A stretch of DNA of 64,000 nucleotides, from the IMG/VR virus record IMGVR_UViG_3300020578_000006, positions 124,001 to 188,000 of that record. One strand, given 5' to 3'. Each line of letters starts with the position of its first letter. The stretch's first letter is position 1. The notes below the pieces were generated by a model that saw only the letters and a program-made list of their open reading frames with translations, did not search any database and was not told the origin of the DNA. A program made the translations under genes and the position numbers. Positions 2,898-60,078 of this stretch are shown in pieces.

Positions 2898-2925
2898 ATT
2901 ATAAGGTATGGTATAATATTTTCAA
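2898..2925 (-). promoter_or_regulatory. Sigma70-type promoter TTGAAA-N16-TATAAT (dut)
   Basis: 6 nt before ATG 2891. Confidence 0.75.
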
Positions 2926-2927
2926 CG

Positions 2928-2935
2928 TATAAATA
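2928..2935 (+). promoter_or_regulatory. Late promoter TATAAATA
   Basis: 4 nt before ATG 2940. Confidence 0.8.
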
Positions 2936-2939
2936 TAGA

Positions 2940-3440
2940 ATGGAAGATAATGAATTTAGCGTTAATGACCTTATTAAAGAGCTTAATATAAACACTAAGG
3001 AGAATAAGGATAAGCTTAATAATGAAGAGTTTAATTTACCAAAGGACAAACTAGAAGACTTTGTATTGAGTAGTACTGGGAAGCTCGTTACACAAGGGCT
3101 TGATATTGTCGAAGGGGTAAAGGAATATGTTATGAACAACCCGGAAAGCCGAGAAGTTCAAGCATTAGCAGAGGCATTAAAGGCCGTAGCTAGTGCCTTG
3201 TCGGTTGTTAAGGATATTCACATTACACAGGTAAGAAGAGAAAGTGCAAAGGAATTAAAAACCATGGAAATAGAGGCTAGAAAAGAAATTAAACAGGAAG
3301 AAAATACAACCAAACTTTACATTACACGGGATGAGATTTTTAGGAAAATAATGGAAGATGCAAAGACTATAGAAGCAGAAGCCATTAATATCAATACAGC
3401 TACGCCTTCAGCACTCCCTGAGAAGTCAGAGAACTCGTAA
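2940..3440 (+). CDS. Probable terminase small subunit (gp16-like)
   Basis: Helical LVTQGLDIVEGVKEY...SREVQALAEALKAVAS segment resembles the gp16 core (ESEHPRAYEVAGQLIKTVA type); size and late promoter fit. Confidence 0.5.
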   Translation: MEDNEFSVNDLIKELNINTKENKDKLNNEEFNLPKDKLEDFVLSSTGKLVTQGLDIVEGVKEYVMNNPESREVQALAEALKAVASALSVVKDIHITQVRRESAKELKTMEIEARKEIKQEENTTKLYITRDEIFRKIMEDAKTIEAEAININTATPSALPEKSENS

Positions 3441-4242
3441 CATCTTTTAACTGATTAAACAATAAATCTTGATTTAATTTGTTACCTTCTACGTCAACAG
3501 TAATGTTTACATTAGGAACAAACTGTAAATTATTAGAAGATGATCTAGGATTATAGTTTATGTAATACAAAATTACATTGTAAAGCTCTTTAAATTCTCC
3601 TTGTATTTTTTGTTGTATAGTGGGAGCAAGTTGTTTCATTCTTTTGAAATGCTCTGTATCAGGTATAAGGTTTTCCCCTTGAGCTTTAGTATTACTTTCT
3701 ACTTTGTTCTGAATGCTTTGAATGTTTTTTCTAAACACTAGATTAGTTTTTTTACTTAATTCAGAGTGTAAAAGTAAAGTGGCTGGGCTTATCTTATTTG
3801 ATAAAGTAGCACCATATCTAAAAGGCGAGAGAACAGATTCGCTATTAATATCACTAACAAGTTGTAATGAATCATCGAGATAGTTTTCTATTCTTGCTAA
3901 GCTTCCCATACAATCACTAAAGGATTTGTAGAATGTACCTTCACCTATTTTTATTCTTACTTGATTTTTTACTTCATCTATCGCGGTATCAAAAGTTTTT
4001 ATCCAATTAGCTGCAAATTGAGGAGACATTTTTTTCATCTGACCATCTAAATCTGCAAAAAAATCTCTTTGCGCCGTAATTACATCGTTTTGAACTTTAG
4101 TTAAATTATATTTTATACCAGTTTCTAATTCTTTAGAATAACTTTGAATAGTAGATAAAAAGTTACTTGCTTTGTTGTAAAATTCTTTTTTGTAAAAAAG
4201 ATTAATTTTGGTGAGAAACGGATCGATTGTTTGATTATTCAT
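3400..4242 (-). CDS. Hypothetical baseplate-operon protein
   Basis: 280-aa ORF coupled (ATGA overlap) to the upstream baseplate genes. Confidence 0.55.
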   Translation of the reverse strand: MNNQTIDPFLTKINLFYKKEFYNKASNFLSTIQSYSKELETGIKYNLTKVQNDVITAQRDFFADLDGQMKKMSPQFAANWIKTFDTAIDEVKNQVRIKIGEGTFYKSFSDCMGSLARIENYLDDSLQLVSDINSESVLSPFRYGATLSNKISPATLLLHSELSKKTNLVFRKNIQSIQNKVESNTKAQGENLIPDTEHFKRMKQLAPTIQQKIQGEFKELYNVILYYINYNPRSSSNNLQFVPNVNITVDVEGNKLNQDLLFNQLKDVTSSLTSQGVLKA

Positions 4243-9972: not shown

Positions 9973-10910
9973 TAAAAGAATCCAGCAGGGTTAAGAACGC
10001 GAGTGGCAGCGTCTTGTAAAGGTGATACTTGGGGAGTATAGCTACCATTAATAATGCCGCTGACGTTGTTAATAATATCGGCAAGAGGAAAATACATACT
10101 GTTTTCTACTGTATAATTTGTGTACGCAAAATTTACATCATAAATTATTGCTTGGTCTGGCTCTCTGTAATCTAAATTTATATTGTTAATAAGTGTAGGT
10201 ACACAATTATAAAACTTATATACTTTTCTAGGTATTTGGCTTATGTTTTGATAGCTTCTCGTATAGCAAAGCAGTGTAATATTACACTTAATATTTCTGT
10301 AATCCTTTTGACCAGGTATATCGTTTGGGTATGCAACCATTCCTAAATGGCTAGCCAAAATAACCCAAGGCCTGAATACATTATCTACAATACTAGTATT
10401 GGTTTCAAGAAATCCTAATCTTAGTGGCGTTTGCGAATATCCTGTTCTATTTTCTGACATAACACCTTGCACAAACCCTCTGCTTTTACCGGTAGTACCA
10501 ATTGTTATGTCTCGAGTTGTAAAGGTTTCCTGGGGTATCATCGCAGTTTGGGCGAACACACACCCAATAACTTTTTGAAATGGAAAACTTGTTAATAATA
10601 TTTTTGCTTGATCAATATCATACCCTCTCTTACCTCCATCTGTTCGTTCCAATCTTTGTAATAGTTGAGAATTTAGCGCTCTCGGAAAAGAGTCAATAAC
10701 TGCGATCCATTGCGATTGTAAAGGTATACTTGTAAGCCAGCTTTGAAGTTGAAGTAGGAAATAATCTCTTGTACTGATTAGCGGTACACCGGGTATATTA
10801 AAACCCAGTAAATTAGTAATTTGAGGTTCAGATAAAGGGTTAGTACCGCGGCCGATACCTAAAACGTTATTAGTAAGACCTTGAAAGGCATTAGTAATAG
10901 GGTTATTCAT
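9972..10910 (-). CDS. Tail-tube-fold baseplate protein (gp54-like tube initiator)
   Basis: LRLGFLETN...FRPW...YKFYNCVP...YDVNFAY gp19/gp54-family pattern; own late promoter. Confidence 0.6.
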   Translation of the reverse strand: MNNPITNAFQGLTNNVLGIGRGTNPLSEPQITNLLGFNIPGVPLISTRDYFLLQLQSWLTSIPLQSQWIAVIDSFPRALNSQLLQRLERTDGGKRGYDIDQAKILLTSFPFQKVIGCVFAQTAMIPQETFTTRDITIGTTGKSRGFVQGVMSENRTGYSQTPLRLGFLETNTSIVDNVFRPWVILASHLGMVAYPNDIPGQKDYRNIKCNITLLCYTRSYQNISQIPRKVYKFYNCVPTLINNINLDYREPDQAIIYDVNFAYTNYTVENSMYFPLADIINNVSGIINGSYTPQVSPLQDAATRVLNPAGFF

Positions 10911-10916
10911 CCCTAT

Positions 10917-10924
10917 TATTTATA
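10917..10924 (-). promoter_or_regulatory. Late promoter TATAAATA
   Basis: 6 nt before ATG 10910. Confidence 0.8.
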
Positions 10925-10936: not shown

Positions 10937-11482
10937 TTATGACTTACGAATGAAGTAATGATATGCCAAACCAACATCAAATGTAACGACATCACCCTTA
11001 CCACTAGAGAAATCATACTTAATACCACCAACTTCTCTAATACTAACACCAACAAGCTGATATTGAGCTACTTTTTCCATCTGTGAATCTAGTTGAACTA
11101 AGTCAATAGTGCTAGATTGGGTAGGTGTAAAATAGTTACCAGTGCTGTTAGTATCATTAAATGTATCGCGAGTCCAATCTTCAAACTTCTGTCTAAGATT
11201 GTTTTTAGCATCATTATAGAATGTTAATTGATAGTTTGCACTGTTGGGGTAGTTTACAACACCTGGAATATTGAAATTTAACCCCATGTAAGTTGTTGTA
11301 ACATTATTAATGGCACGCGCAGGTAGAGAAGCAGATCTAGCATACACTAGATCATCTTCACCAAATGTCTGTGTTGTGCCGCCTGGAGATATACTAAGCA
11401 CTCTAAAATGAATATCGCGTTGAAAGTCACGCGCAGAAGCTACTCTGTAAAAATCAGCAATTAATTGTTTTACGGCTGCCAT
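10937..11482 (-). CDS. gp19: Tail tube protein gp19
   Basis: ARSASLP...YMGLNFNIPG...LRQKFEDW...FDVGLAYHYF; directly downstream of gp18. Confidence 0.88.
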   Translation of the reverse strand: MAAVKQLIADFYRVASARDFQRDIHFRVLSISPGGTTQTFGEDDLVYARSASLPARAINNVTTTYMGLNFNIPGVVNYPNSANYQLTFYNDAKNNLRQKFEDWTRDTFNDTNSTGNYFTPTQSSTIDLVQLDSQMEKVAQYQLVGVSIREVGGIKYDFSSGKGDVVTFDVGLAYHYFIRKS

Positions 11483-11489
11483 AATGTAT

Positions 11490-11497
11490 TATTTATT
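11490..11497 (-). promoter_or_regulatory. Late promoter AATAAATA (gp19)
   Basis: 7 nt before ATG 11482. Confidence 0.65.
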
Positions 11498-13991: not shown

Positions 13992-14576
13992 TTATAAAAG
14001 TGTCATCTTTAACTGATGATAAGCAAACTGAAAGCCACATTCCATTTCATTAGGGTCTCTATCATTATAATTAACACCCTCTAGACCTATAGGAAACGAA
14101 CGAATATAGTCAAATTTTACTGTTCTTTTATTGTATTCGTCCAAGCCATATATAGAGATGTCTGTCATATATTCTGGTGTATTAGAGTCTATATTAGGGT
14201 TTTTTGGGTCAAAAATACCTGTTGTGGCATTATTGAATATATCTAGCCATTTGTAAAGCACCCAATAGTTGTTAAATTGATTATCAACTGTAAAGCTTAC
14301 CTTAAGACTTGGAAAATCTGGTCTTGCATAAGAAGTTACCTTGAGTGTTTGTCCAGAATAAGGAAGTAAGACCGGTGGAACCTCTATAGGAGGTGCAACC
14401 GCACCCCATATACTAAACTGTAAAGTATTAAAATTTACTACGGAATTTCTTCTTGCAATCTCTGCAACTTTATCTTTTAAAATTGTAGGAATGGTTAGAA
14501 CCAAAATAAATTTATCCCTACGCTGCTTGTTAAAAGGGCTTTGAAAAATTGGAGTCTGATTTACAGGGGTCGCCAC
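13992..14576 (-). CDS. Tail completion / tube terminator (gp3-like, gp19 fold)
   Basis: KFILVL...PYSGQTLKV...LKVSFTVDNQFNNYWVLYKWL...FPIGLEGVNY; GTG start. Confidence 0.65.
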   Translation of the reverse strand: MATPVNQTPIFQSPFNKQRRDKFILVLTIPTILKDKVAEIARRNSVVNFNTLQFSIWGAVAPPIEVPPVLLPYSGQTLKVTSYARPDFPSLKVSFTVDNQFNNYWVLYKWLDIFNNATTGIFDPKNPNIDSNTPEYMTDISIYGLDEYNKRTVKFDYIRSFPIGLEGVNYNDRDPNEMECGFQFAYHQLKMTLL

Positions 14577-16306
14577 GGATTATTTATACCTTTACTCGGA
14601 TCTCCCGGAAAATACCACCCCTGTTGTCTTAGGTCTTCTATTTCTGCATCTACAATTGGCATCTTGTCATCCATTACAACAGGTAAAATACTATTGTCGT
14701 TATTTTCTAATTTTTCATTTGAGTATACGCTAAACGGACTTATTACGCCTTTAATACCGTAATCTAGGCTCTTAATAACTTGTGGCCTGTCACAAGCGTC
14801 AAGAGATACAACATCAAAATATCTAACACATATTTCATTTTCCAATGCCATTAACGCCCATATTAATGCCATCACTCTATCATCCCAACTATCGGATCCC
14901 GGTCTTGCACCCCACGTATTATTCGGGTATCTAATAAAACTTTTTAATTCTCTCAAGGTATACGTATCACGAAGCTTTACAGCTTTAAGCTCGTTAACCC
15001 AATATCTCATATTCATTACCCCTCTATATTTGGTATTGGTATGAGAGTATATTCCTAACCGTTTTATTTTTTGAATATTATTTTCACCTGCTTTTGACCC
15101 CCACGATACTATATTTTCATATCTGTGAGTAAATTTTAATTGCTCTACTACTTGTGCACCACAACTATTTCTTTCTATTAATACAGGGGGTCTGCCCCAT
15201 TGATTCAAAACTTCCAGTAATTTGGCCGTAAACGAAAAAGGAATTGTATCTCTAGTATGATATATTGCTACCTGCTCTATAGACGTAAGATCTGTAACAT
15301 CCAAAATTTGAATTACACTTGCTGCCTCTCCGACCCCCTCGCTGATATCAACCCCAACTACATATAATCTTTCTTCTTTAGGTTCTTCCCAAACCAAATA
15401 TCTACCCTCATCAAATATAAATTCTGGCTCTCTTATTTCCCGGCTCAAAACCCCGAAAAGAGCTTCATCTACTGAACTTTCCCCTCCATGCAAAAATTCA
15501 TTTCCAAACTCTTGTGCAAACGCCTCCTGGCTTCCTAATGTCTTAATTGTATCGTTTTTCCATTTTTCATCTCTTCCGGGAATTTCCCACCAATCAATTC
15601 TTTCTGATTTCCAGTTATTATCTCCCGATTGTGCTCCAGCATATAGTTGATAAAATAAATTATCCGTTCCATTTGGAGTACTTGCTATAAAAATTTTAGA
15701 TTTTTTTGAACTTGAAATAATTGGATAGACAGATTCCCAGAATTTTTCTACAATATGATTATCGATAAAAGCCAACTCATCAAGAATAAGACAATTACAA
15801 CTATCACCTCTACCTGCATCACTACTTGTTGTACTAATACCAATACTACTACCATTAGTTAGAGTCATACTTGTCTGCCCATATTCTACAACTCCTGGTT
15901 TTAAAAAGTTAGGTAACATTTCATAAGCCATTCTAACTCTTTTAAAGATGTTTTTTGCAGTTTGTTCTTTATTAGCAACAATCAAAATTCTCTGATCGTC
16001 ATTAAAACATGCATTCCATAAACAATAAATGGTCATTAAAGTTGTTTTACCTATCTGTCTAGAAGCAAGTAATATTACAAACCTACCGTCTCTTAAACTT
16101 CTAAGAATTCTCTTTTGACAAGAATATAGCTTAATTTTTTCTTTTCCTCTATCTAGATTAATAATGTAGAAGTAATTTTCTGCAAAATGTAATAAGTTTT
16201 TCTTACATTTTTTTAATTCACTTATCATTTCTGCCGTATACTCATGCTTAGTATTGACGGTTGGTAATCTTTCATTACCTAGATAAAATTTCTCTTTTTT
16301 CTCCAT
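14561..16306 (-). CDS. gp17: Terminase large subunit gp17
   Basis: ASRQIGKT Walker A, LILDELAF Walker B, STPNG, FAQEF, VGVDISEG and DDRVMAL nuclease motifs. Confidence 0.97.
   Translation of the reverse strand: MEKKEKFYLGNERLPTVNTKHEYTAEMISELKKCKKNLLHFAENYFYIINLDRGKEKIKLYSCQKRILRSLRDGRFVILLASRQIGKTTLMTIYCLWNACFNDDQRILIVANKEQTAKNIFKRVRMAYEMLPNFLKPGVVEYGQTSMTLTNGSSIGISTTSSDAGRGDSCNCLILDELAFIDNHIVEKFWESVYPIISSSKKSKIFIASTPNGTDNLFYQLYAGAQSGDNNWKSERIDWWEIPGRDEKWKNDTIKTLGSQEAFAQEFGNEFLHGGESSVDEALFGVLSREIREPEFIFDEGRYLVWEEPKEERLYVVGVDISEGVGEAASVIQILDVTDLTSIEQVAIYHTRDTIPFSFTAKLLEVLNQWGRPPVLIERNSCGAQVVEQLKFTHRYENIVSWGSKAGENNIQKIKRLGIYSHTNTKYRGVMNMRYWVNELKAVKLRDTYTLRELKSFIRYPNNTWGARPGSDSWDDRVMALIWALMALENEICVRYFDVVSLDACDRPQVIKSLDYGIKGVISPFSVYSNEKLENNDNSILPVVMDDKMPIVDAEIEDLRQQGWYFPGDPSKGINNPWRPL
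14581..14588 (-). promoter_or_regulatory. Late promoter TATAAATA
   Basis: 4 nt before GTG 14576. Confidence 0.8.
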
Positions 16307-16312
16307 TTAATA

Positions 16313-16320
16313 TATTTAGA
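16313..16320 (-). promoter_or_regulatory. Variant late promoter TCTAAATA (gp17)
   Basis: 6 nt before ATG 16306; one mismatch. Confidence 0.45.
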
Positions 16321-17338: not shown

Positions 17339-17343
17339 ACATT

Positions 17344-45495: not shown

Positions 45496-46665
45496 GTGGC
45501 TTACATATCCCTAAAAGACCTATATTTTGAAGACGTAGCCGGCATAACTGTGCCTCCGCTGCCTAGACAACAGGTAAATACACCCCCGGTCAAAGTTTTT
45601 GTGCCGGGTGATGAATATGTACCTCAAACACCGTGGACAGAATACGATATATCTCCAGATTTATTTCAAAAAACAGCAGGTGGGGATAAGGAAGGTACTG
45701 GTAGAGGAGAATACAGTATAGCATGTATATTGTATGGGTTCAAGACTAAGGAACAAGTGGATAAAGCATCTGGTAGAATTATACAAGGCGGGGGAGCTTC
45801 TTTTGACGTGGTAGGACCAGATAAACGCAAGTATGAGGTAAAAGAATTAACTAAAGCTGTACGTACAGGAACGGAAGGAACCGGGGTTTTTACAGATATC
45901 CTTAATTCGACAATAGAATTGTTAGATGCTATACTAAAGGAATTTAATACGCTAGACGCCCAGGGTAAGCAGACCATAAACAATATGATTCTAAATAGCA
46001 ATACAGTAAAAAGCACTATTCTTAACAGAAAAAGTCAAAAGGGACATTTTGACGCTATTAAAGACAGGTGGAGCTTAGATGAATATTTAAATGACATAAA
46101 GCGTAAAGCCCCAAGAGAGCTCTCTAAAGGTATTCTTATTTCTCCTATTTTAAATTTAGGTCAATATAAAGAAGAGCGCCCTTACGTAATTTTTTCCTTA
46201 AAACAATTAGTTGATGTATTAAACGAGATTGCCTCTACACAAGTCGCAACAGGCAATGAAGAAGGTACACCTAATCCAGCTGTAAGGGATATCGCCGATA
46301 CTATCAATAAACATTACAGCGTACAAGGTGATGAGAAAGAAAAAGAATTTTTCAAAAAAGAGGCAGAGAAAATTGATAGGGCATTAATTCAAAAGAGATG
46401 TAAGGAATTTAAAAAATGTACTGATGAATTATCTTTTAGAAAGCAAATAATAGCACTTAATTTGTCAGGAATGCTTAAGCTAATTCAAGATAAAACTCAA
46501 GATATTGTTGAGAATTTATTTCCAAATGATGGGTTATTTGCAGTAAACAGCCAAGGCTTTCAATACATTCCGCATAGTAAGTTAAATACCTATCTTGCTT
46601 TTGATACAATAAGTTCAGGAAGTGTAAAGATCAAGCAAAAAATAGCTAGTAATGAAACCATTTAA
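45496..46665 (+). CDS. Hypothetical late protein with PD-(D/E)xK-like nuclease motif
   Basis: GRGEY...FDVVGPDKRKYEVK pattern. Confidence 0.5.
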   Translation: MAYISLKDLYFEDVAGITVPPLPRQQVNTPPVKVFVPGDEYVPQTPWTEYDISPDLFQKTAGGDKEGTGRGEYSIACILYGFKTKEQVDKASGRIIQGGGASFDVVGPDKRKYEVKELTKAVRTGTEGTGVFTDILNSTIELLDAILKEFNTLDAQGKQTINNMILNSNTVKSTILNRKSQKGHFDAIKDRWSLDEYLNDIKRKAPRELSKGILISPILNLGQYKEERPYVIFSLKQLVDVLNEIASTQVATGNEEGTPNPAVRDIADTINKHYSVQGDEKEKEFFKKEAEKIDRALIQKRCKEFKKCTDELSFRKQIIALNLSGMLKLIQDKTQDIVENLFPNDGLFAVNSQGFQYIPHSKLNTYLAFDTISSGSVKIKQKIASNETI

Positions 46666-48636: not shown

Positions 48637-49215
48637 TTCGTTAATAGCATTTAATGCTTCAAGATTAAAAATTGTTTGGCGTAATACAGATTCTAGAACT
48701 TCTTTACCCTCACCGTACAGCATATCTCTTATTTTAGATACTATTTTTAATTCATGTGAATTTTCATCTGCATCAAACTCACCGTCTTTTCTAAATTTGT
48801 TATATTCAAGATAGTTTTTAACACTCTCAATATAGCTTGCAGCTAATGTAATTTTACTGAATACCCAAGGTTCTAAATCTTGATTGTCTTTTAGTAGATT
48901 GTAAAGAGCTTTTGACCCGTTATGAATTTTATATAGTTCGTTCTTTGCCATATCAGCTTCAGATTCACCAGAACCGGTAGAGGGTTCAACAGGGGTAATT
49001 TTTGAAGAATCTTCACAATTTTCACTATTTTTACACTGTAAACAATCTTCACCATCTTCACACCCACAAGATTTTTTATTAAGCTTTATTACTGTTGATG
49101 TGTTATTGGAAGGTACCATATTCGTGGTTTCGGCCGCGGGGCCCAGGTTTAATTCATTAACTACAATCTGGGTATAAGCTTCGGAAATTTTTTCTAATTC
49201 ACCTTTTCTGCTCAT
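48601..49215 (-). CDS. Hypothetical late protein (MSRKGELEKISE) with Cys cluster
   Basis: ORF with late promoter; EADMAKNEL...PWVFSKIT helical segment. Confidence 0.6.
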   Translation of the reverse strand: MSRKGELEKISEAYTQIVVNELNLGPAAETTNMVPSNNTSTVIKLNKKSCGCEDGEDCLQCKNSENCEDSSKITPVEPSTGSGESEADMAKNELYKIHNGSKALYNLLKDNQDLEPWVFSKITLAASYIESVKNYLEYNKFRKDGEFDADENSHELKIVSKIRDMLYGEGKEVLESVLRQTIFNLEALNAINESGNKGSAPTAN

Positions 49216-49221
49216 TTTATA

Positions 49222-49229
49222 TATTTATT
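49222..49229 (-). promoter_or_regulatory. Late promoter AATAAATA
   Basis: 6 nt before ATG 49215. Confidence 0.65.
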
Positions 49230-49991: not shown

Positions 49992-50648
49992 TTAGATTAA
50001 TTTTCGGTTTTGTGCGAACTCAATAAACTTGTAAAATTCGTTTCTAGAATTATCTTTATCATCTAGAAAAGCACCAGACATTCTTGCGGTACGCATAGTT
50101 GAATCATGTCTAATGCCACGGTTAGAGCAGCATGTGTGAGCGGCCTCAATCATAACAGCTACTCCTTTATTCTTAATACAAACTTCATCAATATACTTGT
50201 GAATTTGCATTGTAAGGTTTTCTTGTACTTGAGGGCGACGAGAAAACCAATCCACAATACGATTTAATTTACTCAATCCAATCACCTTACCGTCCTTTGC
50301 AGGAATATAAGCAACGTGGGCAAACCCCATAAAAGGTGCGTGGTGGTGTGAGCAGAGCGATGTAACTTTAATATTGGTTTGAGATACAATACCATCATAC
50401 TTATCTACATTATCAAACGCGGTAATCTTAGGCGGCTCACTATAACATCCCCAGGCAAAGTCTTCTACAAATGCCTTAGCAACCCTAAAGGGGGTGTTGG
50501 CACTATTTGGATCGTTTCTCCAATCATAACCCAAAGCGTCCATGTATGCTTCATACGCGGCCGCGGCCTTTAGTATAATTTGATTTCTCTCTTCCTCGGA
50601 ATGTGGATGGTTATGATTGGCAAAAGCTAGCTTTTTCTTATTAAACAT
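49992..50648 (-). CDS. folE: GTP cyclohydrolase I FolE
   Basis: TPFRVAK, SLCSHHHAPF, GLSKLNR, RPQVQENLT, HTCCSNRG. Confidence 0.96.
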   Translation of the reverse strand: MFNKKKLAFANHNHPHSEEERNQIILKAAAAYEAYMDALGYDWRNDPNSANTPFRVAKAFVEDFAWGCYSEPPKITAFDNVDKYDGIVSQTNIKVTSLCSHHHAPFMGFAHVAYIPAKDGKVIGLSKLNRIVDWFSRRPQVQENLTMQIHKYIDEVCIKNKGVAVMIEAAHTCCSNRGIRHDSTMRTARMSGAFLDDKDNSRNEFYKFIEFAQNRKLI

Positions 50649-50654
50649 ATTATT

Positions 50655-50681
50655 ATTATATCAATAATGTTAGATAATCAA
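50655..50681 (-). promoter_or_regulatory. Sigma70-type promoter TTGATT-N15-TATAAT (folE)
   Basis: 6 nt before ATG 50648; 15-nt spacer. Confidence 0.6.
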
Positions 50682-52306: not shown

Positions 52307-52334
52307 TTGATTTATCACTATAAGTTAATATACT
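52307..52334 (+). promoter_or_regulatory. Sigma70-type promoter TTGATT-N16-TATACT (queD)
   Basis: 6 nt before ATG 52341. Confidence 0.78.
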
Positions 52335-52340
52335 ATATAG

Positions 52341-52994
52341 ATGTCATTTCAATTTGAAAGTACAAAAATTATTGATTTAGGTAGTTGTGCGTTTAGACAA
52401 TGGAGAGCTGATAGTCATTGTAAGTTTATTCATGGCTACAGGCTGCAAGCTAAATTCTGGTTTGGTTGTAACAATTTAGACGAAAAGAATTGGGTTGTAG
52501 ATTTTGGAGGTTTAAAGCAATTAAAATTAACTTTAGAGAAACAGTTTGATCACACATTATGCATTGCTGGTGATGATCCTTTATTAGAAGATTTTAAAAA
52601 CCTACATAACAAAGGTGCTGTTGATTTAAGAATTATGCCAACAGGTGTAGGTATAGAGCGTACAGCACAATGGTGTTTTATAAATGCTGACATTATTATA
52701 AGATCCCAGACAAATAATAGATGTTGGGTTGAAAGAGTAGAGGTATGGGAGCATGATAAAAATTCTGCTATTGTAACGCGAGACTATGTTACAGTACCAC
52801 AACATGATCCTTATGTTTCAGAGAAACATAATGCAGAACAATTTGAACTACCTTTTCAACCACAGGCTACCACGGTTGCTGCTCCTGCTCCAGAGATACA
52901 AAACGCAGTTACAAGGAGTAATGCAGCTGCGGTCGGTAATGAAATGTCTACCGGTTGGGGCAATCCATTTGGTGGTACTAGCTGGGGTTCTTAA
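52341..52994 (+). CDS. queD: 6-carboxytetrahydropterin synthase QueD with long C-terminal tail
   Basis: SHCKFIHGY, WVVDFGGLK, FDHT, VEVWEHDKN. Confidence 0.92.
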   Translation: MSFQFESTKIIDLGSCAFRQWRADSHCKFIHGYRLQAKFWFGCNNLDEKNWVVDFGGLKQLKLTLEKQFDHTLCIAGDDPLLEDFKNLHNKGAVDLRIMPTGVGIERTAQWCFINADIIIRSQTNNRCWVERVEVWEHDKNSAIVTRDYVTVPQHDPYVSEKHNAEQFELPFQPQATTVAAPAPEIQNAVTRSNAAAVGNEMSTGWGNPFGGTSWGS

Positions 52995-53715
52995 TAGTCT
53001 TAACTATAGAAACTATAAACTTTAGTAGCTTGCTCCTGGTAATATCGTCTTCGGTAAAGTGAAACGTTTCAATACCATGTTCCTTGCTGTTTTCACAACT
53101 GAAAGCTTTCATAAAACTCTGAAAGCCAGATTTAGGAATATCAGATTGCAAGGAATCACCAATAACAAATAACTTACAACCCTTACCAAATCTAGTTAGA
53201 ATTGTTGTTAATTCATTATGCTCTAGATTTTGTGCCTCATCAACAATTACCACATTGTTGGAAAACGTTGCTCCTCGTAAAAAATTAACAGGTATACATT
53301 TTAAATATTCATTCTCAAAGAGTATATTAGCTATTTGCTTACCCACAAGCTCATCACATTTTTCTACTAATGGTATGCTCCATGGCTTAAACTTATCGTC
53401 TACCTCCCCCGGTAAACTACCTAGTTTTCTAGAAGCTGATTCAACAATACTCCGTATATACACAATTTCATCTGCCTTTCGCTCTTTAAGTAATGTTAAG
53501 GCAACATACACAGCAAGATATGTTTTTGAGCTTCCTGCTGGTCCATCTGCAAAAATGATGTTTGTTTTATCATCAAAAGCCTTCTCTGCAAAAGCTTTGT
53601 GATGTTCATTTAAATGAAACTTTTGATCAATTTTAAAATTTAGAAGAATATCAGACTTAATGAGTTTTTCTTCAAATTTAGCAGCCTTTCTGGCTGCTCT
53701 AGCCATCTTAGACAT
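52978..53715 (-). CDS. phoH: PhoH-family ATPase
   Basis: GPAGSSKT, LGSLPG, FLRGATF, VDEAQN, GDSLQSD, EDDITRS. Confidence 0.95.
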   Translation of the reverse strand: MSKMARAARKAAKFEEKLIKSDILLNFKIDQKFHLNEHHKAFAEKAFDDKTNIIFADGPAGSSKTYLAVYVALTLLKERKADEIVYIRSIVESASRKLGSLPGEVDDKFKPWSIPLVEKCDELVGKQIANILFENEYLKCIPVNFLRGATFSNNVVIVDEAQNLEHNELTTILTRFGKGCKLFVIGDSLQSDIPKSGFQSFMKAFSCENSKEHGIETFHFTEDDITRSKLLKFIVSIVKTIKNPS

Positions 53716-53721
53716 CTGTAT

Positions 53722-53729
53722 TATTTATT
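53722..53729 (-). promoter_or_regulatory. Late promoter AATAAATA (phoH)
   Basis: 6 nt before ATG 53715. Confidence 0.62.
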
Positions 53730-53740: not shown

Positions 53741-53768
53741 TTGATTAATGCAAAGTTAACCTTATAAT
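53741..53768 (+). promoter_or_regulatory. Sigma70-type promoter TTGATT-N16-TATAAT (queE)
   Basis: 6 nt before ATG 53775. Confidence 0.8.
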
Positions 53769-53774
53769 AATACT

Positions 53775-54521
53775 ATGTCTTTAGATACAACAATATTTTT
53801 AAGTGATGATAAGGTTTTTTATACAATAGAAGGGGAAGGCGAATATGTAGGTCACCCATCGGTGTTTATGAGATTATCGATGTGTAATTTAACGTGTAAA
53901 GGGTTTGCTTCTGCTGATTCACCTCACGGGTGCGATAGCTTTATAAGTTGGTCAGTAAAAAATCATTTTAAAATTAAAGACATTTTAGATTTACTGGATA
54001 ATGAGGGGTATACAAAGCATTTACGTGAAGGGGCCATCTGGAAGATTACAGGGGGTGAGCCTCTAATTCAACAGAAAAACCTATTAGAACTGGTTAGAGA
54101 GTTTGCTAAGCGTAATGGGTTTATACCAAAAATAGATTTTGAGACTAATGCAACTATTCAACCTTTAGATGACTGGACAGCATACCGGGTAACATATACA
54201 ACCTCTCCAAAGCTATCTAATAACGGTGACCCAGAAGAAAAGCGCTATAAACCTGCCGTACTTAAATGGCACGTTAGTGCCGGTTCCGGATTCAAATTTG
54301 TAATTAACGAGCAAAAAGACTTAGACGAAGTATATGAGAAGTATATCAACCACCCAGATATATTGTTGCCAAGACATAGAGTATGGTTAATGCCGTGTTG
54401 TGGTAGTAGGCAAGAGCATACAGAAAAAGCTTCTATGGTAGCAGAATTATGTAAAACACATGATATGAAATTTAGTCCAAGGTTGCAGCTAGTAATTTGG
54501 GATAAAGCATTAAAAGTATAG
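53775..54521 (+). CDS. queE: 7-carboxy-7-deazaguanine synthase QueE (radical SAM)
   Basis: FYTIEGEG, RLSMCNLTC...CD, ITGGEPL, FETNAT, TSPKL, SPRLQ. Confidence 0.94.
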   Translation: MSLDTTIFLSDDKVFYTIEGEGEYVGHPSVFMRLSMCNLTCKGFASADSPHGCDSFISWSVKNHFKIKDILDLLDNEGYTKHLREGAIWKITGGEPLIQQKNLLELVREFAKRNGFIPKIDFETNATIQPLDDWTAYRVTYTTSPKLSNNGDPEEKRYKPAVLKWHVSAGSGFKFVINEQKDLDEVYEKYINHPDILLPRHRVWLMPCCGSRQEHTEKASMVAELCKTHDMKFSPRLQLVIWDKALKV

Positions 54522-54549
54522 TTGATTTTTTATACTCTTTATTTAAATT
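54522..54549 (+). promoter_or_regulatory. Sigma70-type promoter TTGATT-N16-TAAATT
   Basis: 5 nt before ATG 54555. Confidence 0.6.
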
Positions 54550-54554
54550 AACTT

Positions 54555-54752
54555 ATGAACGTAAACATCGATGTAACTATTTCTGGTGAAAATGGTGGTG
54601 ATGAATCATTTAGAGTACTATTAAATCAGGATGAACTTACCAATATTATTAAAACTGAAGGTCTAGAAGCTGGTAATAAGGCATTAGATACTTTTGTAGA
54701 TAAGTTTGTATTGCAGTTTAAGTCTAAGCTTGCTTCTGTTATCAATCGCTAA
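54555..54752 (+). CDS. Small hypothetical protein
   Basis: 65-aa ORF with promoter. Confidence 0.55.
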   Translation: MNVNIDVTISGENGGDESFRVLLNQDELTNIIKTEGLEAGNKALDTFVDKFVLQFKSKLASVINR

Positions 54753-54756
54753 TTAT

Positions 54757-54764
54757 AATAAATA
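54757..54764 (+). promoter_or_regulatory. Late promoter AATAAATA
   Basis: 4 nt before GTG 54769. Confidence 0.62.
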
Positions 54765-54768
54765 ATTG

Positions 54769-56359: not shown

Positions 56360-56365
56360 TAAATA
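56358..56365 (+). promoter_or_regulatory. Late promoter AATAAATA
   Basis: 5 nt before ATG 56371. Confidence 0.62.
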
Positions 56366-56370
56366 TCTTA

Positions 56371-56601
56371 ATGTTATTTGATAAAAATTACAATTTTATA
56401 ATGGAAAGTTTTAAGTCAATTAAAACCATTCATAGACTGTTTTATCCAAGAAACTTTAATCTATCTGAAGAATTTATAAATTCTTTTCGAAAAGAATATG
56501 CAAGGTTAAAGTCAATGAATATTGATGATAGAAGAATTTTACAGAAAATGATTAAGGCGCTACCCTTTCATAAGGATAACGTAAATATTAATACTCTATA
56601 A
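56371..56601 (+). CDS. Small hypothetical late protein (MLFDKNYNFIME)
   Basis: 76-aa ORF with late promoter. Confidence 0.55.
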   Translation: MLFDKNYNFIMESFKSIKTIHRLFYPRNFNLSEEFINSFRKEYARLKSMNIDDRRILQKMIKALPFHKDNVNINTL

Positions 56602-57415
56602 TAACAACCCCGGCTGCTCCACTACCACCAGCACCGCTTGCAGAACCTCCACCACCGCCGGCTCCCGTATTATCTGAACCGTTTTGACCGCTCACGTTAC
56701 TACCATTACCACCGCGACCGGCTCCTGAGCCCATAAACCCTGGTCCGCCTCGTCCGCCTGCAGCAAACGCCGCAGTACTCCCCGCAATACCATTTTCACC
56801 AGAAGAGCCTGCTAAAGGTATATCACCACCAGACCCTGCTAATCCCCCTGCCCCACCGGCGACCGCACCTCCAGCAGACCCAACAGTGCCACCAGAACCT
56901 CCCGGTGCTATAACCTGTGTTTCTCCTGTAACCGTAAAGGTGGACTGACCGCCTGCTGCAGCTGCAGCACCACCGGCGCCAACCACATAAGAATATGTTT
57001 TACCTCTTACATTTGTAAAATATTTTATGTTTGTACTGCCCCCGCCACCACCACCTCCAGCTCCTGAGCTGCTGGAGCCGCCTCCACCTCCCCCGCCACC
57101 TACTATAGTCACCTTAATATTGTTAACACCGGCGGGAAATGTTACACCGGATGCTGACCCCCCACCAGTAGGTGCGTATCTAATAACAGTGGTAAACCCT
57201 GGTTGGCGAGACTCTACCGTAGCACTCAAGGTATTAACCCGACTACTAATAGTGGCTACAGATGTATAAAAACTAGTATTGTTTGGCCCTATTACAAAAT
57301 CTTTAAAATCTATAATGTTTGTGCCTGTACTATTTTCAACAATAAGATAATTGCCGTTGACAATTTCCTCTATTTGGTTTAACTCTTTAATATTAACCTT
57401 GTTAAACGTCGACAT
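56588..57415 (-). CDS. Glycine-rich tail fibre/baseplate appendage protein
   Basis: VTIVGGGGGGG...YSYVVGAGG...GGSGAAGVVIIEY glycine-rich domain; late promoter. Confidence 0.75.
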   Translation of the reverse strand: MSTFNKVNIKELNQIEEIVNGNYLIVENSTGTNIIDFKDFVIGPNNTSFYTSVATISSRVNTLSATVESRQPGFTTVIRYAPTGGGSASGVTFPAGVNNIKVTIVGGGGGGGGSSSSGAGGGGGGGSTNIKYFTNVRGKTYSYVVGAGGAAAAAGGQSTFTVTGETQVIAPGGSGGTVGSAGGAVAGGAGGLAGSGGDIPLAGSSGENGIAGSTAAFAAGGRGGPGFMGSGAGRGGNGSNVSGQNGSDNTGAGGGGGSASGAGGSGAAGVVIIEY

Positions 57416-57421
57416 ATCAGT

Positions 57422-57429
57422 TATTTATT
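57422..57429 (-). promoter_or_regulatory. Late promoter AATAAATA
   Basis: 6 nt before ATG 57415. Confidence 0.62.
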
Positions 57430-57475
57430 ACTTTAGATATAGTTGCAATACAATTATTTTTAATATAATAAACGT

Positions 57476-58285
57476 ATGACGGGTGTAGGAATTGTAACAT
57501 GTAATCGACCGAAATTTTTTCTTAAATGCTTTAGAACTATTCCCAAAGATGTTGAGCTTGTTGTAGTTAATGACGGTTCGAAATTTGAAGATTGGGAGAG
57601 ACTATTAAACGAAAGACCTTTTAAATTTATACAAAACGAACAAAATCTAGGCGTAGGCAAATCAAAAAATAAGCTGCTTAAAGCGTTGCTTGAAAAGGGT
57701 TGCACAGATCTTTTTTTAATTGAGGATGATATTATAGTTAAAGATCCAGAGGTATTCAATGAATATATTAGAGCCAAAGACATAACAGGTATACAGCACT
57801 TTAATTTTGGATATCATGGCCCGGCTAATAAGGGAAATATATCCGGTGGTGCACCAACACCTCGATATATTATAGATTACGGTGATATAAAGATAGCATT
57901 TAATGCACACAGTGTTGGTGCTTTTTGTTATTATTCGAAAGCATGTTTAGATAAAGCAGGCTTAATAGATGAAGACTATACAAATGCTTTTGAACATGTT
58001 GATCATGATTATAGAATTTTTAAAGTTGGTATGGGGGCACCCTACTGGCATTTTCCGGATATAGCAAATAGTATGGATTATTTAGATGAAATAGAATGTT
58101 CAGAAAAAAGTAGTGCAATAAGACCGAGAACAGATTGGCGGTCAAATATAGAGCACGGGGTAAAGCTTTTCAAAGAGAAGCATGGTTATTTACCCGCTTG
58201 GCAAGGTGCAGTTCCAGATATGGATGAAAAGAAAGTTAGAAGAATTTTAAAAGACCTGCAACGCTTTTACGCAAAGAGAGATTAA
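57476..58285 (+). CDS. GT2 glycosyltransferase
   Basis: IVTCNRP, VVNDGS, NLGVGKSKN, LIEDDI, FEHVD. Confidence 0.88.
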   Translation: MTGVGIVTCNRPKFFLKCFRTIPKDVELVVVNDGSKFEDWERLLNERPFKFIQNEQNLGVGKSKNKLLKALLEKGCTDLFLIEDDIIVKDPEVFNEYIRAKDITGIQHFNFGYHGPANKGNISGGAPTPRYIIDYGDIKIAFNAHSVGAFCYYSKACLDKAGLIDEDYTNAFEHVDHDYRIFKVGMGAPYWHFPDIANSMDYLDEIECSEKSSAIRPRTDWRSNIEHGVKLFKEKHGYLPAWQGAVPDMDEKKVRRILKDLQRFYAKRD

Positions 58286-59170
58286 ATGCCAGCTAATAAA
58301 AAGATTGCTTTCGGGGTAAATTTGTTCGGTAAATCAGTTCGAACTGATTTATGTATAGAATCACTTCTTGTAGTAAAAAGCAAATATCCAGATATTATAG
58401 ACTTATACAATATTCAATTTGAAGACAAAGCTATCAAAGGTAGAGAGCATCCGGGTATAAAAACCCTATTTGTATTAAAAGAATCTAATAAAGACTATGT
58501 AAAAGAATCAACACGGACTATACCTATGTTGAGAGAAGTTTTTGATAAATTAGCTGATTTAAATTATGAATATTTTGCATTTACTAATGATGATATTATA
58601 ATTTCGGACAGACTAATAAAAGTTTTCTTAGAGACAGACTACGATTCATGGCCAGCGAGTAGGCTGGCCATTGAGCCTATTTTTACTTTATCTGAACCAA
58701 TTTCAGGCGATCATTATCAGGTTGCAGGTTTTGATACATTTATTTTTAAGACTTCTTGGTGGAAAAAGAAACGATTAGAGTTTCCGAATTATATCCTAGG
58801 CCATCCTTGTTGGGATGTACATTACGCTACATTATGCTTAAGGCATGGAAAATCTAAATTCTGTAACGACTGGCCACCACCCACCTTTCATATAAAACAC
58901 GGCGGGGGAGATCAATACTCCACACTGGAAGTAGATTATAATAATAGTTTATACTGGGTACCCTGTAGATTTGATGTTGATATGTGGCATCACTACCTCT
59001 TTAATGTCTTACTAGTGAGACCAGGTATAAATTATTGGACGCCGCATAAAAATGAAGCTGAATTAGAGAAGGTCTGTTTCAATGATACTTGGTTTAAAAC
59101 GAATTATTGGTCTTATTCGGGTGCGCAAGCAGCTGCACAAGCACAACTTTTAAAAAGTTTCTACCAATAA
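58286..59170 (+). CDS. Putative GT-A glycosyltransferase
   Basis: YEYFAFTNDDIII (DD motif), GHPCWD; cluster context. Confidence 0.55.
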   Translation: MPANKKIAFGVNLFGKSVRTDLCIESLLVVKSKYPDIIDLYNIQFEDKAIKGREHPGIKTLFVLKESNKDYVKESTRTIPMLREVFDKLADLNYEYFAFTNDDIIISDRLIKVFLETDYDSWPASRLAIEPIFTLSEPISGDHYQVAGFDTFIFKTSWWKKKRLEFPNYILGHPCWDVHYATLCLRHGKSKFCNDWPPPTFHIKHGGGDQYSTLEVDYNNSLYWVPCRFDVDMWHHYLFNVLLVRPGINYWTPHKNEAELEKVCFNDTWFKTNYWSYSGAQAAAQAQLLKSFYQ

Positions 59171-60027
59171 GTTCCACCCTCAATCTTCATATAACCCTCC
59201 GGCGTCTCTTCAGCAGAAGGCCTTACCCAGGCATTATTATAAAAATGATTAAAAATTCTCATTTGTTCCCATCTTTTACCTTTTATACCAAATAACATTT
59301 GAAGTGCCCCGCCTAAATGTACTGCTTGTTTATTCATATTTTTGGCAAAAGCTGCTAGCGGTAATGATGATGCGCCTGTACCTATCAATGCTACATCGTA
59401 ATCAGCTTGAAACATTTGATATTTGATATCATCGATCATTTCTTTCCATGTTAGATATTTGTTCTTATCACCAGTAATAGCCTTACTTGTCGGGTGAAAA
59501 ATTGTTTTTAAATCAAATTGCGGGAGTACTTCCGGATTTCGCCAGATACTCAATCTATTTGAATATTGTTTTTTTATCGTTTCGGTAAAAGGGCTTATAA
59601 CCAAAACTCGCTTATCCTTTAGAAGACTAGTCCAAGGCAATCCATGATAAAAAGATTCTAATGATTGAAGATCAACCAATACACTGGAAGGATTTCTGCT
59701 TTTTATAAATCTTAGTTCAAAATCCCCTAATCCATTATTCCAAGGTGAAATAATATCTGTAGCTGTTACCGCGTCGGATAGTTGTTCACAAAAATATATT
59801 CTAGCCTCTTCTGTCTGAGGAAAGACCCCAGCATTAACAAAAATTTCATTTACAACTGTCGGGTTCCAGGAAATTGGGCTTTGATTGTGATGTTTGGCAA
59901 AAAAATAATTGTACGCACACATTAATTCGGCATTACCTATCTTACCTATACACAACGGTTTACCAGTTTTTAAAGCCTCATATATTTCCACACCGCCTTC
60001 CAAAAAGTTTAACACTTTAAAATCCAT
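59161..60027 (-). CDS. Polysaccharide-locus-type protein (GT-D-like)
   Basis: KIGNAE, LKDKRVLVISPF, DVALIG...PLA...KQAVHLGG. Confidence 0.55.
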   Translation of the reverse strand: MDFKVLNFLEGGVEIYEALKTGKPLCIGKIGNAELMCAYNYFFAKHHNQSPISWNPTVVNEIFVNAGVFPQTEEARIYFCEQLSDAVTATDIISPWNNGLGDFELRFIKSRNPSSVLVDLQSLESFYHGLPWTSLLKDKRVLVISPFTETIKKQYSNRLSIWRNPEVLPQFDLKTIFHPTSKAITGDKNKYLTWKEMIDDIKYQMFQADYDVALIGTGASSLPLAAFAKNMNKQAVHLGGALQMLFGIKGKRWEQMRIFNHFYNNAWVRPSAEETPEGYMKIEGGTYW

Positions 60028-60032
60028 ACTTT

Positions 60033-60060
60033 ATTTTAATGTATATATCATTGAAATCCA
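60033..60060 (-). promoter_or_regulatory. Sigma70-type promoter TGGATT-N16-TAAAAT
   Basis: 5 nt before ATG 60027. Confidence 0.5.
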
Positions 60061-60078
60061 TTGATTATGATATAAAAT
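60051..60078 (+). promoter_or_regulatory. Sigma70-type promoter TTGAAA-N16-TAAAAT
   Basis: 6 nt before GTG 60085. Confidence 0.7.

What the first reader, a model, noticed from the sequence alone, without database searches (positions are those of the whole stretch)
2898..60078. Sigma70-type promoters with a 16-nt spacer sit exactly at the start codon (leaderless early mRNAs)
Eighteen promoters of the form TTG(A/C)NN-spacer-TANNNT were read by hand upstream of early or middle genes. These include dut, gp61, gp45, gp32, gp43, uvsY, folE, queD, queE, the kinase and GT genes. The spacer is 16 nt in 16 cases (one 17, one 15), not the canonical 17. The -10 box always ends 5-7 nt before the ATG/GTG, where a sigma70 start site normally falls, and none has a Shine-Dalgarno site. 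The inference is that early expression is leaderless and tuned to a host RNA polymerase that prefers a short spacer. This would be a host-lineage fingerprint and a possible way to escape SD-dependent control.
Basis: partly seen in the sequence, partly recalled or inferred. Interest (0 to 1): 0.75.

Follow-up and report, generated by a model that had tools for sequence, protein, structure and literature searches.

The report
Promoters fused to start codons (leaderless)
An uncultured freshwater T4-like phage places both its host-type early promoters and its own late promoters so close to the start codon that about a third of its genes should give mRNAs with no leader and no ribosome-binding site, a layout conserved across a large clade of related phages.

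Summary
The window lies in a complete 229.7-kb lake-water T4-like phage. Genome-wide, 46-51 genes (15-17 in the window) carry TTGAyw-N16-TATAAT ending 6 nt before the first ATG/GTG. That table cell holds 26 genes against about 0.3 per cell elsewhere, and Markov simulations give 0-1. Spacer 16 dominates (34 of 46), and none of the 51 has an SD-like motif.

The same method recovers this 6-nt geometry in Thermus phage phiYS40, where leaderless mRNAs were shown experimentally. It finds nothing in T4, Syn9, Cr30, RM378 or PAU. The layout is kept upstream of the DNA polymerase gene in relatives down to about 42% identity.

Another 65 genes (tail tube, terminase, tail fibres, bS21) have the T4 late-promoter core TAAATA ending 4-6 nt before the start codon. 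Leaderless design is therefore genome-wide, not an early-gene trait.

The 16-nt spacer is unusual: four reference phages peak at 17. Whether it reflects the host cannot be told, because the host is unknown. No transcript data could be found, so start sites remain inferred.

The parts
2889..2925 (-). Early promoter fused to the dUTPase start: TTGAAA-16-TATAAT-6-ATG
18836..18873 (-). Early promoter, spacer 17, d=6, ATG of a 114-aa ORF
19703..19739 (-).
21579..21614 (-). Early promoter, spacer 16, d=5, GTG of the primase (gp61-like)
24370..24406 (-). Early promoter, spacer 16, d=6, GTG of the sliding clamp (gp45-like)
25644..25681 (-). Early promoter, spacer 16, d=7, ATG of the gp32 ssDNA-binding protein
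29321..29357 (-). Early promoter, spacer 16, d=6, GTG of a 218-aa ORF that heads the operon with the gp41-like helicase
33094..33130 (-). Early promoter, spacer 16, d=6, ATG of a 117-aa ORF upstream of the UvsX/RecA-like gene
35716..35752 (-). Early promoter, spacer 16, d=6, GTG of the DNA polymerase (gp43); geometry conserved in 37 of 45 scorable orthologous promoters
43220..43256 (+). Early promoter TTGACT-16-TATAAT-6-ATG of a 177-aa ORF
50646..50681 (-). Early promoter, spacer 15, d=6, ATG of FolE (GTP cyclohydrolase I)
52307..52343 (+). Early promoter, spacer 16, d=6, ATG of QueD (PTPS family)
53741..53777 (+). Early promoter, spacer 16, d=6, ATG of the QueE-like radical-SAM protein
54522..54557 (+). 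Early promoter, spacer 16, d=5, ATG of a 65-aa ORF
54730..54768 (+). Doubtful site: spacer 18, d=6, TTG start of a 290-aa ORF
57443..57478 (+). Early promoter, spacer 15, d=6, ATG of a GT2 glycosyltransferase
60051..60087 (+). Early promoter, spacer 16, d=6, GTG of a 243-aa ORF
2930..2942 (+). Late box TATAAATA, 4 nt, ATG (166 aa); back to back with the dUTPase early promoter
10908..10922 (-). Late box, 6 nt, ATG of a tail-tube-like protein (312 aa)
11480..11495 (-). Late box, 7 nt, ATG of the tail tube protein (181 aa)
14574..14586 (-). Late box, 4 nt, GTG of a tail-tube-like protein (194 aa)
16304..16318 (-). Late box (CTAAATA), 6 nt, ATG of the large terminase
17333..17346 (+). Late box, 5 nt, GTG (133 aa)
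20098..20142 (.). Two divergent late boxes in a 39-nt intergenic region: GTG at 20100 (-) and ATG at 20140 (+)
21794..21808 (-). Late box, 6 nt, ATG (61 aa)
42799..42813 (+). Late box, 6 nt, ATG (138 aa)
43785..43800 (+). Late box, 7 nt, ATG (118 aa)
44552..44565 (+). Late box, 5 nt, ATG (294 aa)
45486..45498 (+). Late box, 4 nt, GTG (389 aa)
49213..49227 (-). Late box, 6 nt, ATG (204 aa)
53713..53727 (-). Late box, 6 nt, ATG (245 aa); divergent from the QueE-like gene's early promoter
56360..56373 (+). Late box, 5 nt, ATG (76 aa)
57413..57427 (-). Late box, 6 nt, ATG (275 aa); divergent from the glycosyltransferase early promoter
40060..40677 (-). gp55-like late sigma factor, the likely reader of the TAAATA boxes

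Best explanation
The window belongs to a complete 229.7-kb, 35% GC, uncultured lake-water T4-like myovirus. Its transcription units are built so that the mRNA starts at the start codon.

Step 1 (sequence shown, function inferred). About 50 early and replication genes carry a host sigma70-type promoter, TTGAyw-N16-TATAAT. Its -10 box ends 6 nt (range 5-7) before the first ATG/GTG. A sigma70 holoenzyme normally starts 7 nt past the -10 box, so position +1 is the A/G of the start codon.

Step 2 (sequence shown, function inferred). About 65-72 late genes carry the T4 late-promoter core (A/C/T)TAAATA ending 4-6 nt (mode 5) before the start codon. In T4 this box occupies -13 to -6. With the phage's gp55-like sigma and gp45 clamp, +1 again falls on the start codon.

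Step 3 (inferred). These 5'-AUG/GUG transcripts are translated without an SD, presumably by direct binding of 70S ribosomes. Downstream genes in each operon are read by coupling: 4-nt and 1-nt overlaps dominate, and weak SD-like sites occur inside the preceding gene.

The result is intergenic regions of about 25-60 nt that hold nothing but promoters, often two placed back to back. The 16-nt spacer is a conserved feature of this phage clade. Its cause, whether host sigma preference or phage lineage, is open.
For: - Enrichment. In one search, 39 of 43 full-pattern matches open an ORF of at least 25 aa.
- Nearly all high-scoring intergenic spacer-16 sites abut a start codon. Spacer-17 matches are mostly inside genes, which suggests chance.
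- No SD: 0 of 51 early genes and 4 of 65 late genes.
- Late class: TAAATA ends at d=4, 5 or 6 in 22, 25 and 16 genes, against about 0.5 per position elsewhere. That is 72 sites, against 0-4 in Markov simulations.
- The two classes do not overlap and fit gene function. Early: dUTPase, gp32, primase, clamp, polymerase, FolE, QueD, QueE-like. Late: tail tube, terminase, tail fibres, sheath stabiliser.
- A gp55-like sigma is present. No sigma region 4 is encoded.
- Positive control: phiYS40 shows TANNNT at d=6 in 28 genes and TTG-17-TANNNT at d=6 in 9. Its middle and late mRNAs are reported to be leaderless (PMC3594737, citing Sevostyanova 2007). In Deinococcus-Thermus a -10 motif 6-7 bp upstream of ORFs gives leaderless mRNA (PMC12340547).
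- Negative controls: T4 and Syn9 carry TAAATA 20-30 nt upstream of starts and have no early class. Cr30, BUCT-ZZ01, RM378 and PAU show no excess of the pattern.
- Conservation: among relatives at 76-88% and at 53-61% polymerase identity, d=6/spacer=16 is again the modal cell (35 and 39 genes; background 0.25-0.36). Upstream of the polymerase, 37 of 45 scorable distinct promoters have d=6 and 31 have spacer 16, while the spacer sequence itself varies freely.
- TTG starts are nearly absent from promoter-abutting genes (at most one per class: 1 of 65 late; among early sites only the doubtful 54766), against 28 of 206 other genes. This fits a need for a purine at +1.
- The T4 late box lies at -13 to -6 relative to the start site (PMC1524935).
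Against: - There is no direct 5'-end evidence. No RNA run holding this sequence could be listed.
- The host is unknown, so neither its start-site rule nor its ability to translate 5'-GUG mRNAs is known. About a quarter of the late starts are GTG.
- The first 40 nt of these mRNAs are no less structured than controls.
- Some genes do have leaders. The tail sheath gene has GGAGG 11 nt before its ATG, and several late boxes sit 9-12 nt upstream.
- My gene set is a greedy longest-ORF call, not a trained gene finder.
Confidence: 0.75

Rival explanations
1. The boxes next to the start codons are A/U-rich translation signals (a non-SD ribosome-binding element) on long polycistronic mRNAs. On this view they are not promoters, and the transcripts have leaders.
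For: The whole genome is A-rich and G-poor just upstream of starts. The late box TAAATA has no -35 partner, so on sequence alone it could be an A/U-rich enhancer.
Against: - The early -10 box co-occurs with TTG at one fixed spacing (26 genes in a single cell). A translation signal would not need that.
- TAAATA is the T4 late-promoter core, and the phage encodes a gp55-like sigma.
- The two motif classes separate by gene function and never overlap.
- Divergent gene pairs 39-60 nt apart must each have a promoter, and no other promoter-like element fits there.
Confidence: 0.08
2. The promoters are real, but the annotated first ATG/GTG is not the true start. Translation would begin at a downstream codon, so the mRNAs have short coding-derived leaders.
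For: Six of 54 early genes have an in-frame ATG/GTG with an SD-like motif within codons 2-40, against 1 of 34 in a control stretch. Six early genes begin ATGATG.
Against: - The enrichment is for the first in-frame start at exactly d=6.
- Polymerase homologues from independent assemblies are all 860-866 aa and align from residue 1. The promoter-to-start distance is kept even where the start shifts by one or two codons.
Confidence: 0.05
3. Same mechanism, different cause. Leaderless design and the short spacer are by-products of genome compaction and of descent within this phage clade. They are neither an adaptation to a host polymerase that prefers 16 nt nor a way to escape SD-dependent control.
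For: - Coding density is about 95%.
- Many -35 boxes lie inside the preceding gene, since gaps of 13-28 nt are shorter than the promoter.
- Spacer 16 is kept across relatives down to about 42% polymerase identity, as a lineage trait would be.
- phiYS40 is leaderless with spacer 17, so leaderless geometry does not itself need 16.
- Internal genes still use SD-like sites.
Against: Four phages with four different hosts all peak at spacer 17 in the same scan. A shift to 16 maintained over about 50 promoters therefore suggests selection by whatever reads them, which is a host sigma.
Confidence: 0.4

Closest known systems
Thermus thermophilus phage phiYS40 (leaderless middle/late mRNAs)
   Same: A large low-GC myovirus. 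Its -10 box ends 6 nt before the start codon in 28 genes, 9 of them with a TTG -35 box. Leaderless transcripts were shown experimentally, and the infection shifts IF2/IF3 (PMC3594737, citing Sevostyanova 2007).
   Different: Its spacer is 17, not 16. It has no T4-type late promoter class. Its host phylum (Deinococcus-Thermus) lacks bS21 (control), whereas this phage encodes bS21. The two phages are not close relatives.
The '-10 motif adjacent to ORFs' of Deinococcus-Thermus, and leaderless genes of Actinobacteria
   Same: A TANNNT box 6-7 bp upstream of the ORF acts as the promoter -10 region and gives leaderless mRNA (PMC12340547).
   Different: Those cellular promoters mostly lack a -35 box. 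Here the -35 box is strong and at a fixed spacing. Here the carrier is a phage whose host probably belongs to neither phylum (bS21 present, no WhiB).
Phage T4 and T4-like cyanophage early (sigma70) and late (gp55, TATAAATA) promoters
   Same: The same two promoter classes, the same late-box sequence, and gp55-like and gp45-like proteins. The T4 late box lies at -13 to -6 (PMC1524935).
   Different: In T4 and Syn9 the late box sits 20-30 nt upstream of start codons, leaving room for a leader with an SD. No early promoter abuts a start, and the spacer peaks at 17.
Pelagibacter phage HTVC008M (pelagimyophages)
   Same: A T4-like, low-GC aquatic phage that encodes bS21. Ten of its genes have TAAATA ending 5 nt before the start.
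   Different: It has no start-abutting early class, its spacer peaks at 17, and 44% of its genes have SD-like sites. No cultured phage shares more than about 31% polymerase identity with this one. Its genome is 147 kb, against 230 kb here.
Lambda cI mRNA from PRM
   Same: The textbook phage leaderless mRNA with a 5'-terminal AUG (PMC10491246).
   Different: That is a single regulatory transcript, not a genome-wide design.

Membership tests
sigma70 (group 1) -35/-10 promoter | A TTGACA-like -35 hexamer and a TATAAT-like -10 hexamer | tested here: met
   Logo of 26 sites: TTGA(c/t)(t/a) and TATAAT, with T not tolerated just before TTG. 46 genes score at least 9 of 12.
sigma70 (group 1) -35/-10 promoter | Spacer of 17 +/- 1 nt between the hexamers | tested here: met
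   Spacer 16 in 34 sites, 15 in 6, 17 in 5, 18 in 1. This is within the known range, but the mode is shifted to 16. Reference phages peak at 17.
sigma70 (group 1) -35/-10 promoter | Read by the host primary sigma factor | tested here: inconclusive
   No phage-encoded sigma region 4; the only sigma-like gene is the gp55-like one. The host, and binding by its sigma, were not tested.
Leaderless mRNA genes | The -10 box ends about 6-7 nt before the start codon | tested here: met
   d=6 in 36 of 46 sites, and d=5-7 in all 46. phiYS40 shows the same.
Leaderless mRNA genes | No Shine-Dalgarno sequence | tested here: met
   0 of 51 early and 4 of 65 late genes, against 7% at random positions.
Leaderless mRNA genes | The transcript 5' end coincides with the start codon | not testable with these tools
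   No RNA run was listed for this sequence.
Leaderless mRNA genes | The leaderless transcript is translated | not testable with these tools
   This needs reporter assays, ribosome profiling or proteomics.
T4-type late promoter (gp55/gp33/gp45 system) | A TATAAATA-like box upstream of late genes | tested here: met
   65 genes, including tail tube, terminase, tail fibres and sheath stabiliser.
T4-type late promoter (gp55/gp33/gp45 system) | gp55 late sigma and gp45 clamp are encoded | tested here: met
   phrog_234, late sigma, E=1.8e-24 at window 40060-40677; phrog_223, clamp, at window 23644-24372.
T4-type late promoter (gp55/gp33/gp45 system) | gp33 co-activator is encoded | not tested
   It is a small, divergent protein and I did not search for it.

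The most novel reading that the evidence does not exclude
A globally distributed, uncultured clade of T4-like phages found in lake and other metagenomes runs both its early (host sigma70) and late (gp55) programmes on leaderless mRNAs. It also carries its own late-expressed ribosomal protein bS21, which would retune host ribosomes toward 5'-terminal AUG/GUG mRNAs and away from SD-led host messages. On this reading the 16-nt spacer marks an as yet unidentified host lineage.
Probability: 0.15. Interest if true: 0.85.

Novelty: new variant of a known kind. Interest (0 to 1): 0.62.

Why it matters
Leaderless expression is known from Actinobacteria, Deinococcus-Thermus, archaea and a few phage transcripts. 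I found no report of it as the organising principle of a T4-like phage, and none for gp55-type late promoters (literature searches).

If it holds, there are several consequences.
- Gene callers and promoter finders that expect leaders and SD sites will mis-handle this abundant aquatic clade. Late promoters could not be found in pelagimyophages (PMC7029224), yet the same geometry appears in HTVC008M.
- The fixed promoter-to-start rule gives a simple way to correct start codons and delimit transcription units in metagenomic phage genomes.
- It raises a testable question about how a host with SD-reading ribosomes translates about 115 leaderless phage messages, a quarter of the late ones with GUG, and whether phage bS21 takes part.
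- The spacer spectrum could become a host-prediction feature if it tracks host sigma factors.

Tried and rejected
- Transcript evidence. Two run searches found 24 DNA runs from lake or fresh water that hold the sequence, but no RNA run.
- Host from mis-binned contigs. The genome-collection scan found relatives in MAGs labelled uncultured bacterium, Melainabacteria, Bacteriovoracaceae and others, with no consistent signal.
- Host from bS21. Only phage relatives were found. PDB hits were weak and not lineage-specific. Atlas neighbours were all viral. There was no hit in cultured phages.
- Host markers. No WhiB, no psbA, and no enrichment of the Bacteroidetes-type TAnnTTTG box (24 observed against 32 expected). 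A Bacteroidia host is unlikely, because SD-like sites are enriched in overlapping internal genes (36 of 117). An actinobacterial or Deinococcus-Thermus host is unlikely, because the phage encodes bS21, which did not ring in the Corynebacterium, Thermus or Deinococcus controls.
- A RegB-like SD-cutting nuclease. No match, but that control search rang nowhere, so it is uninformative.
- 5'-end structure. The mean folding energy of the first 40 nt does not differ from other genes or from internal windows (p=0.39 and 0.74).
- A hidden class of leadered spacer-17 promoters. Twenty-eight of the 34 spacer-17 matches lie inside genes, so they are probably chance.
- The original phiYS40 paper (PMC1885378) is not held. 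I cite it through a review.

Full report
CONTEXT
The window is bases 124001-188000 of a single 229,717-bp contig (35.3% GC, rated 100% complete by CheckV) that is a virus record. Twenty-four lake or freshwater DNA runs hold it, 20 of them at 98-100%. It is a T4-like myovirus. It encodes a family-B DNA polymerase, gp32, gp41-, gp45-, gp46-, gp47-, gp61- and UvsX-like proteins, a gp55-like late sigma, tail sheath and tube proteins and a large terminase. No cultured phage is closer than about 30-32% identity in polymerase or terminase. More than 100 metagenomic relatives at 59-97% polymerase identity exist.

I called 317 genes by a greedy longest-ORF rule, covering 95.5% of the genome. For each first start codon I tabulated TTGNNN-spacer-TANNNT by spacer length and by distance d from the -10 box to the start.
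- The cell d=6, spacer=16 holds 26 genes. Other cells average about 0.25-0.3.
- A secondary cell at d=4, spacer=18 is mostly the same sites read in another register.
- Working from motifs instead of genes, 25 of 58 stringent spacer-16 sites anywhere in the genome are followed at exactly d=6 by an ATG/GTG opening an ORF of at least 50 aa. Twenty second-order Markov genomes gave 0 or 1.
- The full 37-nt pattern occurs 28 times, against 7 for the reversed control.
- Allowing CATAAT as the -10 box, 39 of 43 matches open an ORF of at least 25 aa.
- With one best assignment per gene, 46 genes score at least 9 of 12. Spacer is 16 in 34, 15 in 6, 17 in 5 and 18 in 1; d is 6 in 36, 7 in 6 and 5 in 4.
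- None of the 51 early-class genes has GGAG, GAGG or AGGA in -20..-5. The rate at random positions is 7%.
- High-scoring intergenic spacer-16 sites nearly all abut a start. Spacer-17 matches are mostly inside genes. I therefore see no separate class of early promoters with leaders.

THESE ARE PROMOTERS AND THE GEOMETRY MEANS LEADERLESS
The logo shows TTGA(c/t)(t/a), a variable 16-nt spacer, TATAAT, six variable bases, then ATG/GTG. A fixed -35/-10 pairing is what a sigma70 holoenzyme needs and what a translation signal would not. The phage encodes no sigma region 4, so a host sigma must read the -35 box. Six bases between the -10 box and the start codon put the usual +1 on the A/G of that codon; this start-site rule is established knowledge for sigma70 promoters, not something tested here.

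I ran the same script on four reference phages.
- phiYS40, whose middle and late mRNAs are reported to be leaderless (PMC3594737), shows TANNNT at d=6 in 28 genes and TTG-17-TANNNT at d=6 in 9.
- T4 and Syn9 show nothing.
- HTVC008M shows no early class.
Pattern scans of Cr30, BUCT-ZZ01, RM378 and PAU give no excess over the control. In Deinococcus-Thermus, a -10 motif 6-7 bp upstream of ORFs has been shown to act as the promoter and give leaderless mRNA (PMC12340547).

One internal check agrees. TTG start codons are almost absent from promoter-abutting genes but make up 28 of 206 other calls. This is expected if +1 must be a purine, although some of those TTG calls are probably errors of my gene caller.

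CONSERVATION
Eighty related loci were fetched from IMG/VR. Upstream of the polymerase gene, 57 distinct sequences gave 45 scorable promoters. Of these, 37 have d=6 and 31 have spacer 16, in relatives down to about 42% N-terminal identity. The spacer and discriminator sequences differ freely, and the start codon alternates between ATG (21) and GTG (24). Over all genes in these loci, d=6/spacer=16 is again the mode: 35 genes in the 76-88% identity group and 39 in the 53-61% group, against backgrounds of 0.25-0.36. The trait belongs to a large clade, not to this one genome.

THE FINDING IS BROADER THAN REPORTED
Among genes without an early promoter, the hexamer TAAATA ends 4, 5 or 6 nt before the first start codon in 22, 25 and 16 genes. 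Elsewhere it occurs about 0.5 times per position. Counting from motifs gives 72 sites, against 0-4 in Markov genomes.
- These genes include tail tube proteins, the large terminase, tail fibres and the tail sheath stabiliser.
- None overlaps the early set.
- The box is the T4 late-promoter core, which in T4 lies at -13 to -6 (PMC1524935). With 5 nt after it, +1 is again the start codon.
- A gp55-like sigma (window 40060-40677) and a gp45-like clamp are encoded.
- In T4 and Syn9 the same box sits 20-30 nt upstream of starts.
About 115 of 317 genes, and most genes that follow a gap of 25 nt or more (79 of 133), therefore look leaderless, in both temporal classes.

The remaining genes mostly overlap the preceding gene: 39 by 4 nt and 12 by 1 nt. 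They show a real but modest SD signal, 36 of 117 against 7% at random. A few genes have classic leaders, such as the tail sheath gene with GGAGG.

THE 16-NT SPACER
A context-free scan for good -35/-10 pairs peaks at 17 in HTVC008M, T4, Syn9 and phiYS40. Among start-abutting promoters here, 16 wins by about six to one. The shift is real and clade-wide. phiYS40 shows that leaderless geometry does not require 16. Whether the shift reflects the host's sigma factor or phage ancestry cannot be decided without the host.

HOST
The host is not identified. The constraints are as follows.
- The source is lake water.
- The phage has no WhiB and no psbA.
- It encodes bS21 (genome 39317-39520, minus strand, behind a late box). 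bS21 did not ring in the Corynebacterium, Thermus or Deinococcus controls. This argues against the two phyla best known for leaderless genes.
- SD-like sites are used inside operons, and there is no TAnnTTTG enrichment. This argues against Bacteroidia, whose ribosomes ignore SD (PMC7797042 abstract, seen).
- MAG binning, bS21 similarity and Atlas neighbours gave nothing usable.

WHAT IS NOT SHOWN
No transcript 5' ends are available. Translation of these messages is untested. The first 40 nt of the predicted mRNAs are not unusually unstructured. A role for phage bS21 is only an idea. In E. coli the loss of bS21 eases leaderless translation (PMC10491246). In freshwater Bacteroidetes phages bS21 is expressed late (PMC9723584).

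VERDICT
The host-fingerprint and SD-escape ideas remain open. This is a new variant of a known kind of gene organisation, in a phage family where I found no earlier report of it.

Noticed in passing
L133:19317-19520 (- strand; genome 39317-39520, outside the window): The phage encodes a 67-aa ribosomal protein bS21 homologue (Pfam PF01165, 28.2 bits) directly behind a late TAAATA box (d=4). Close homologues (72-87% identity) occur in related metagenomic phages. The C-terminus is rich in aromatic residues (WKYY).
   Followed up: partly
HTVC008M record NC_020484 (loci L098-L105): Pelagibacter phage HTVC008M has TAAATA ending 5 nt before the start codon in 10 genes, and 14 pattern matches against 4 for the control. 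Earlier work reported that late promoters could not be found in pelagimyophages (PMC7029224). They may have been missed because they abut the start codons.
   Followed up: partly
Genome 218,700-229,300, - strand (L140, L141; outside the window): An early region holds about 15 small ORFs (60-124 aa), each with its own start-abutting promoter. Their 16-nt spacers share a consensus close to AAATCCAAATTTCC. This suggests either an extra recognition element or recent duplication of a promoter cassette.
   Followed up: no
window 2892-2939, 20101-20139, 53716-53774, 57416-57475: Divergent gene pairs are separated by only 39-60 nt. These gaps hold two back-to-back start-abutting promoters (early/late or late/late) and nothing else.
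   Followed up: partly
window 26699-26735 (- strand): A full TTGTTT-16-TATAAT-6-GTG site lies inside the 238-aa ORF 26313-27029, in frame. It could be a chance match, an internal promoter for a 128-aa shorter product, or a sign that the ORF start is over-called.
   Followed up: no
window 13901-13991 (upstream of the tail sheath gene 11510-13900, - strand): An exception to the rule. The tail sheath gene has a 91-nt upstream gap, a late-like box about 45 nt upstream, and a GGAGG 11 nt before its ATG. This is a conventional leader with an SD.
   Followed up: no
Genome-wide; for example genome 5724, 220750, 223216, 223498, 225305 (- strand): Several early genes begin with a doubled start, ATGATG. 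Start-codon use differs by class: GTG in 16 of 65 late and 5 of 46 early genes, and TTG almost never in promoter-abutting genes.
   Followed up: partly
window 49992-58285: A 7-deazaguanine-type gene cluster (FolE, QueD, a QueE-like radical-SAM protein, an AAA_28 protein and GT2 glycosyltransferases), each gene or pair with its own early promoter. A second radical-SAM/QueE-like gene lies at genome 56201-57355. This suggests modified DNA.
   Followed up: no
Genome 7195-23732 (outside the window): Eight tRNA genes (Glu, Met x2, Leu, Arg, Thr, Gln, and Ile with anticodon TAT) lie in one region (aragorn).
   Followed up: no
window 9972-14576 (- strand): Three ORFs (312, 181 and 194 aa) all match the tail tube family phrog_45, and each has its own late box.
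   Followed up: no
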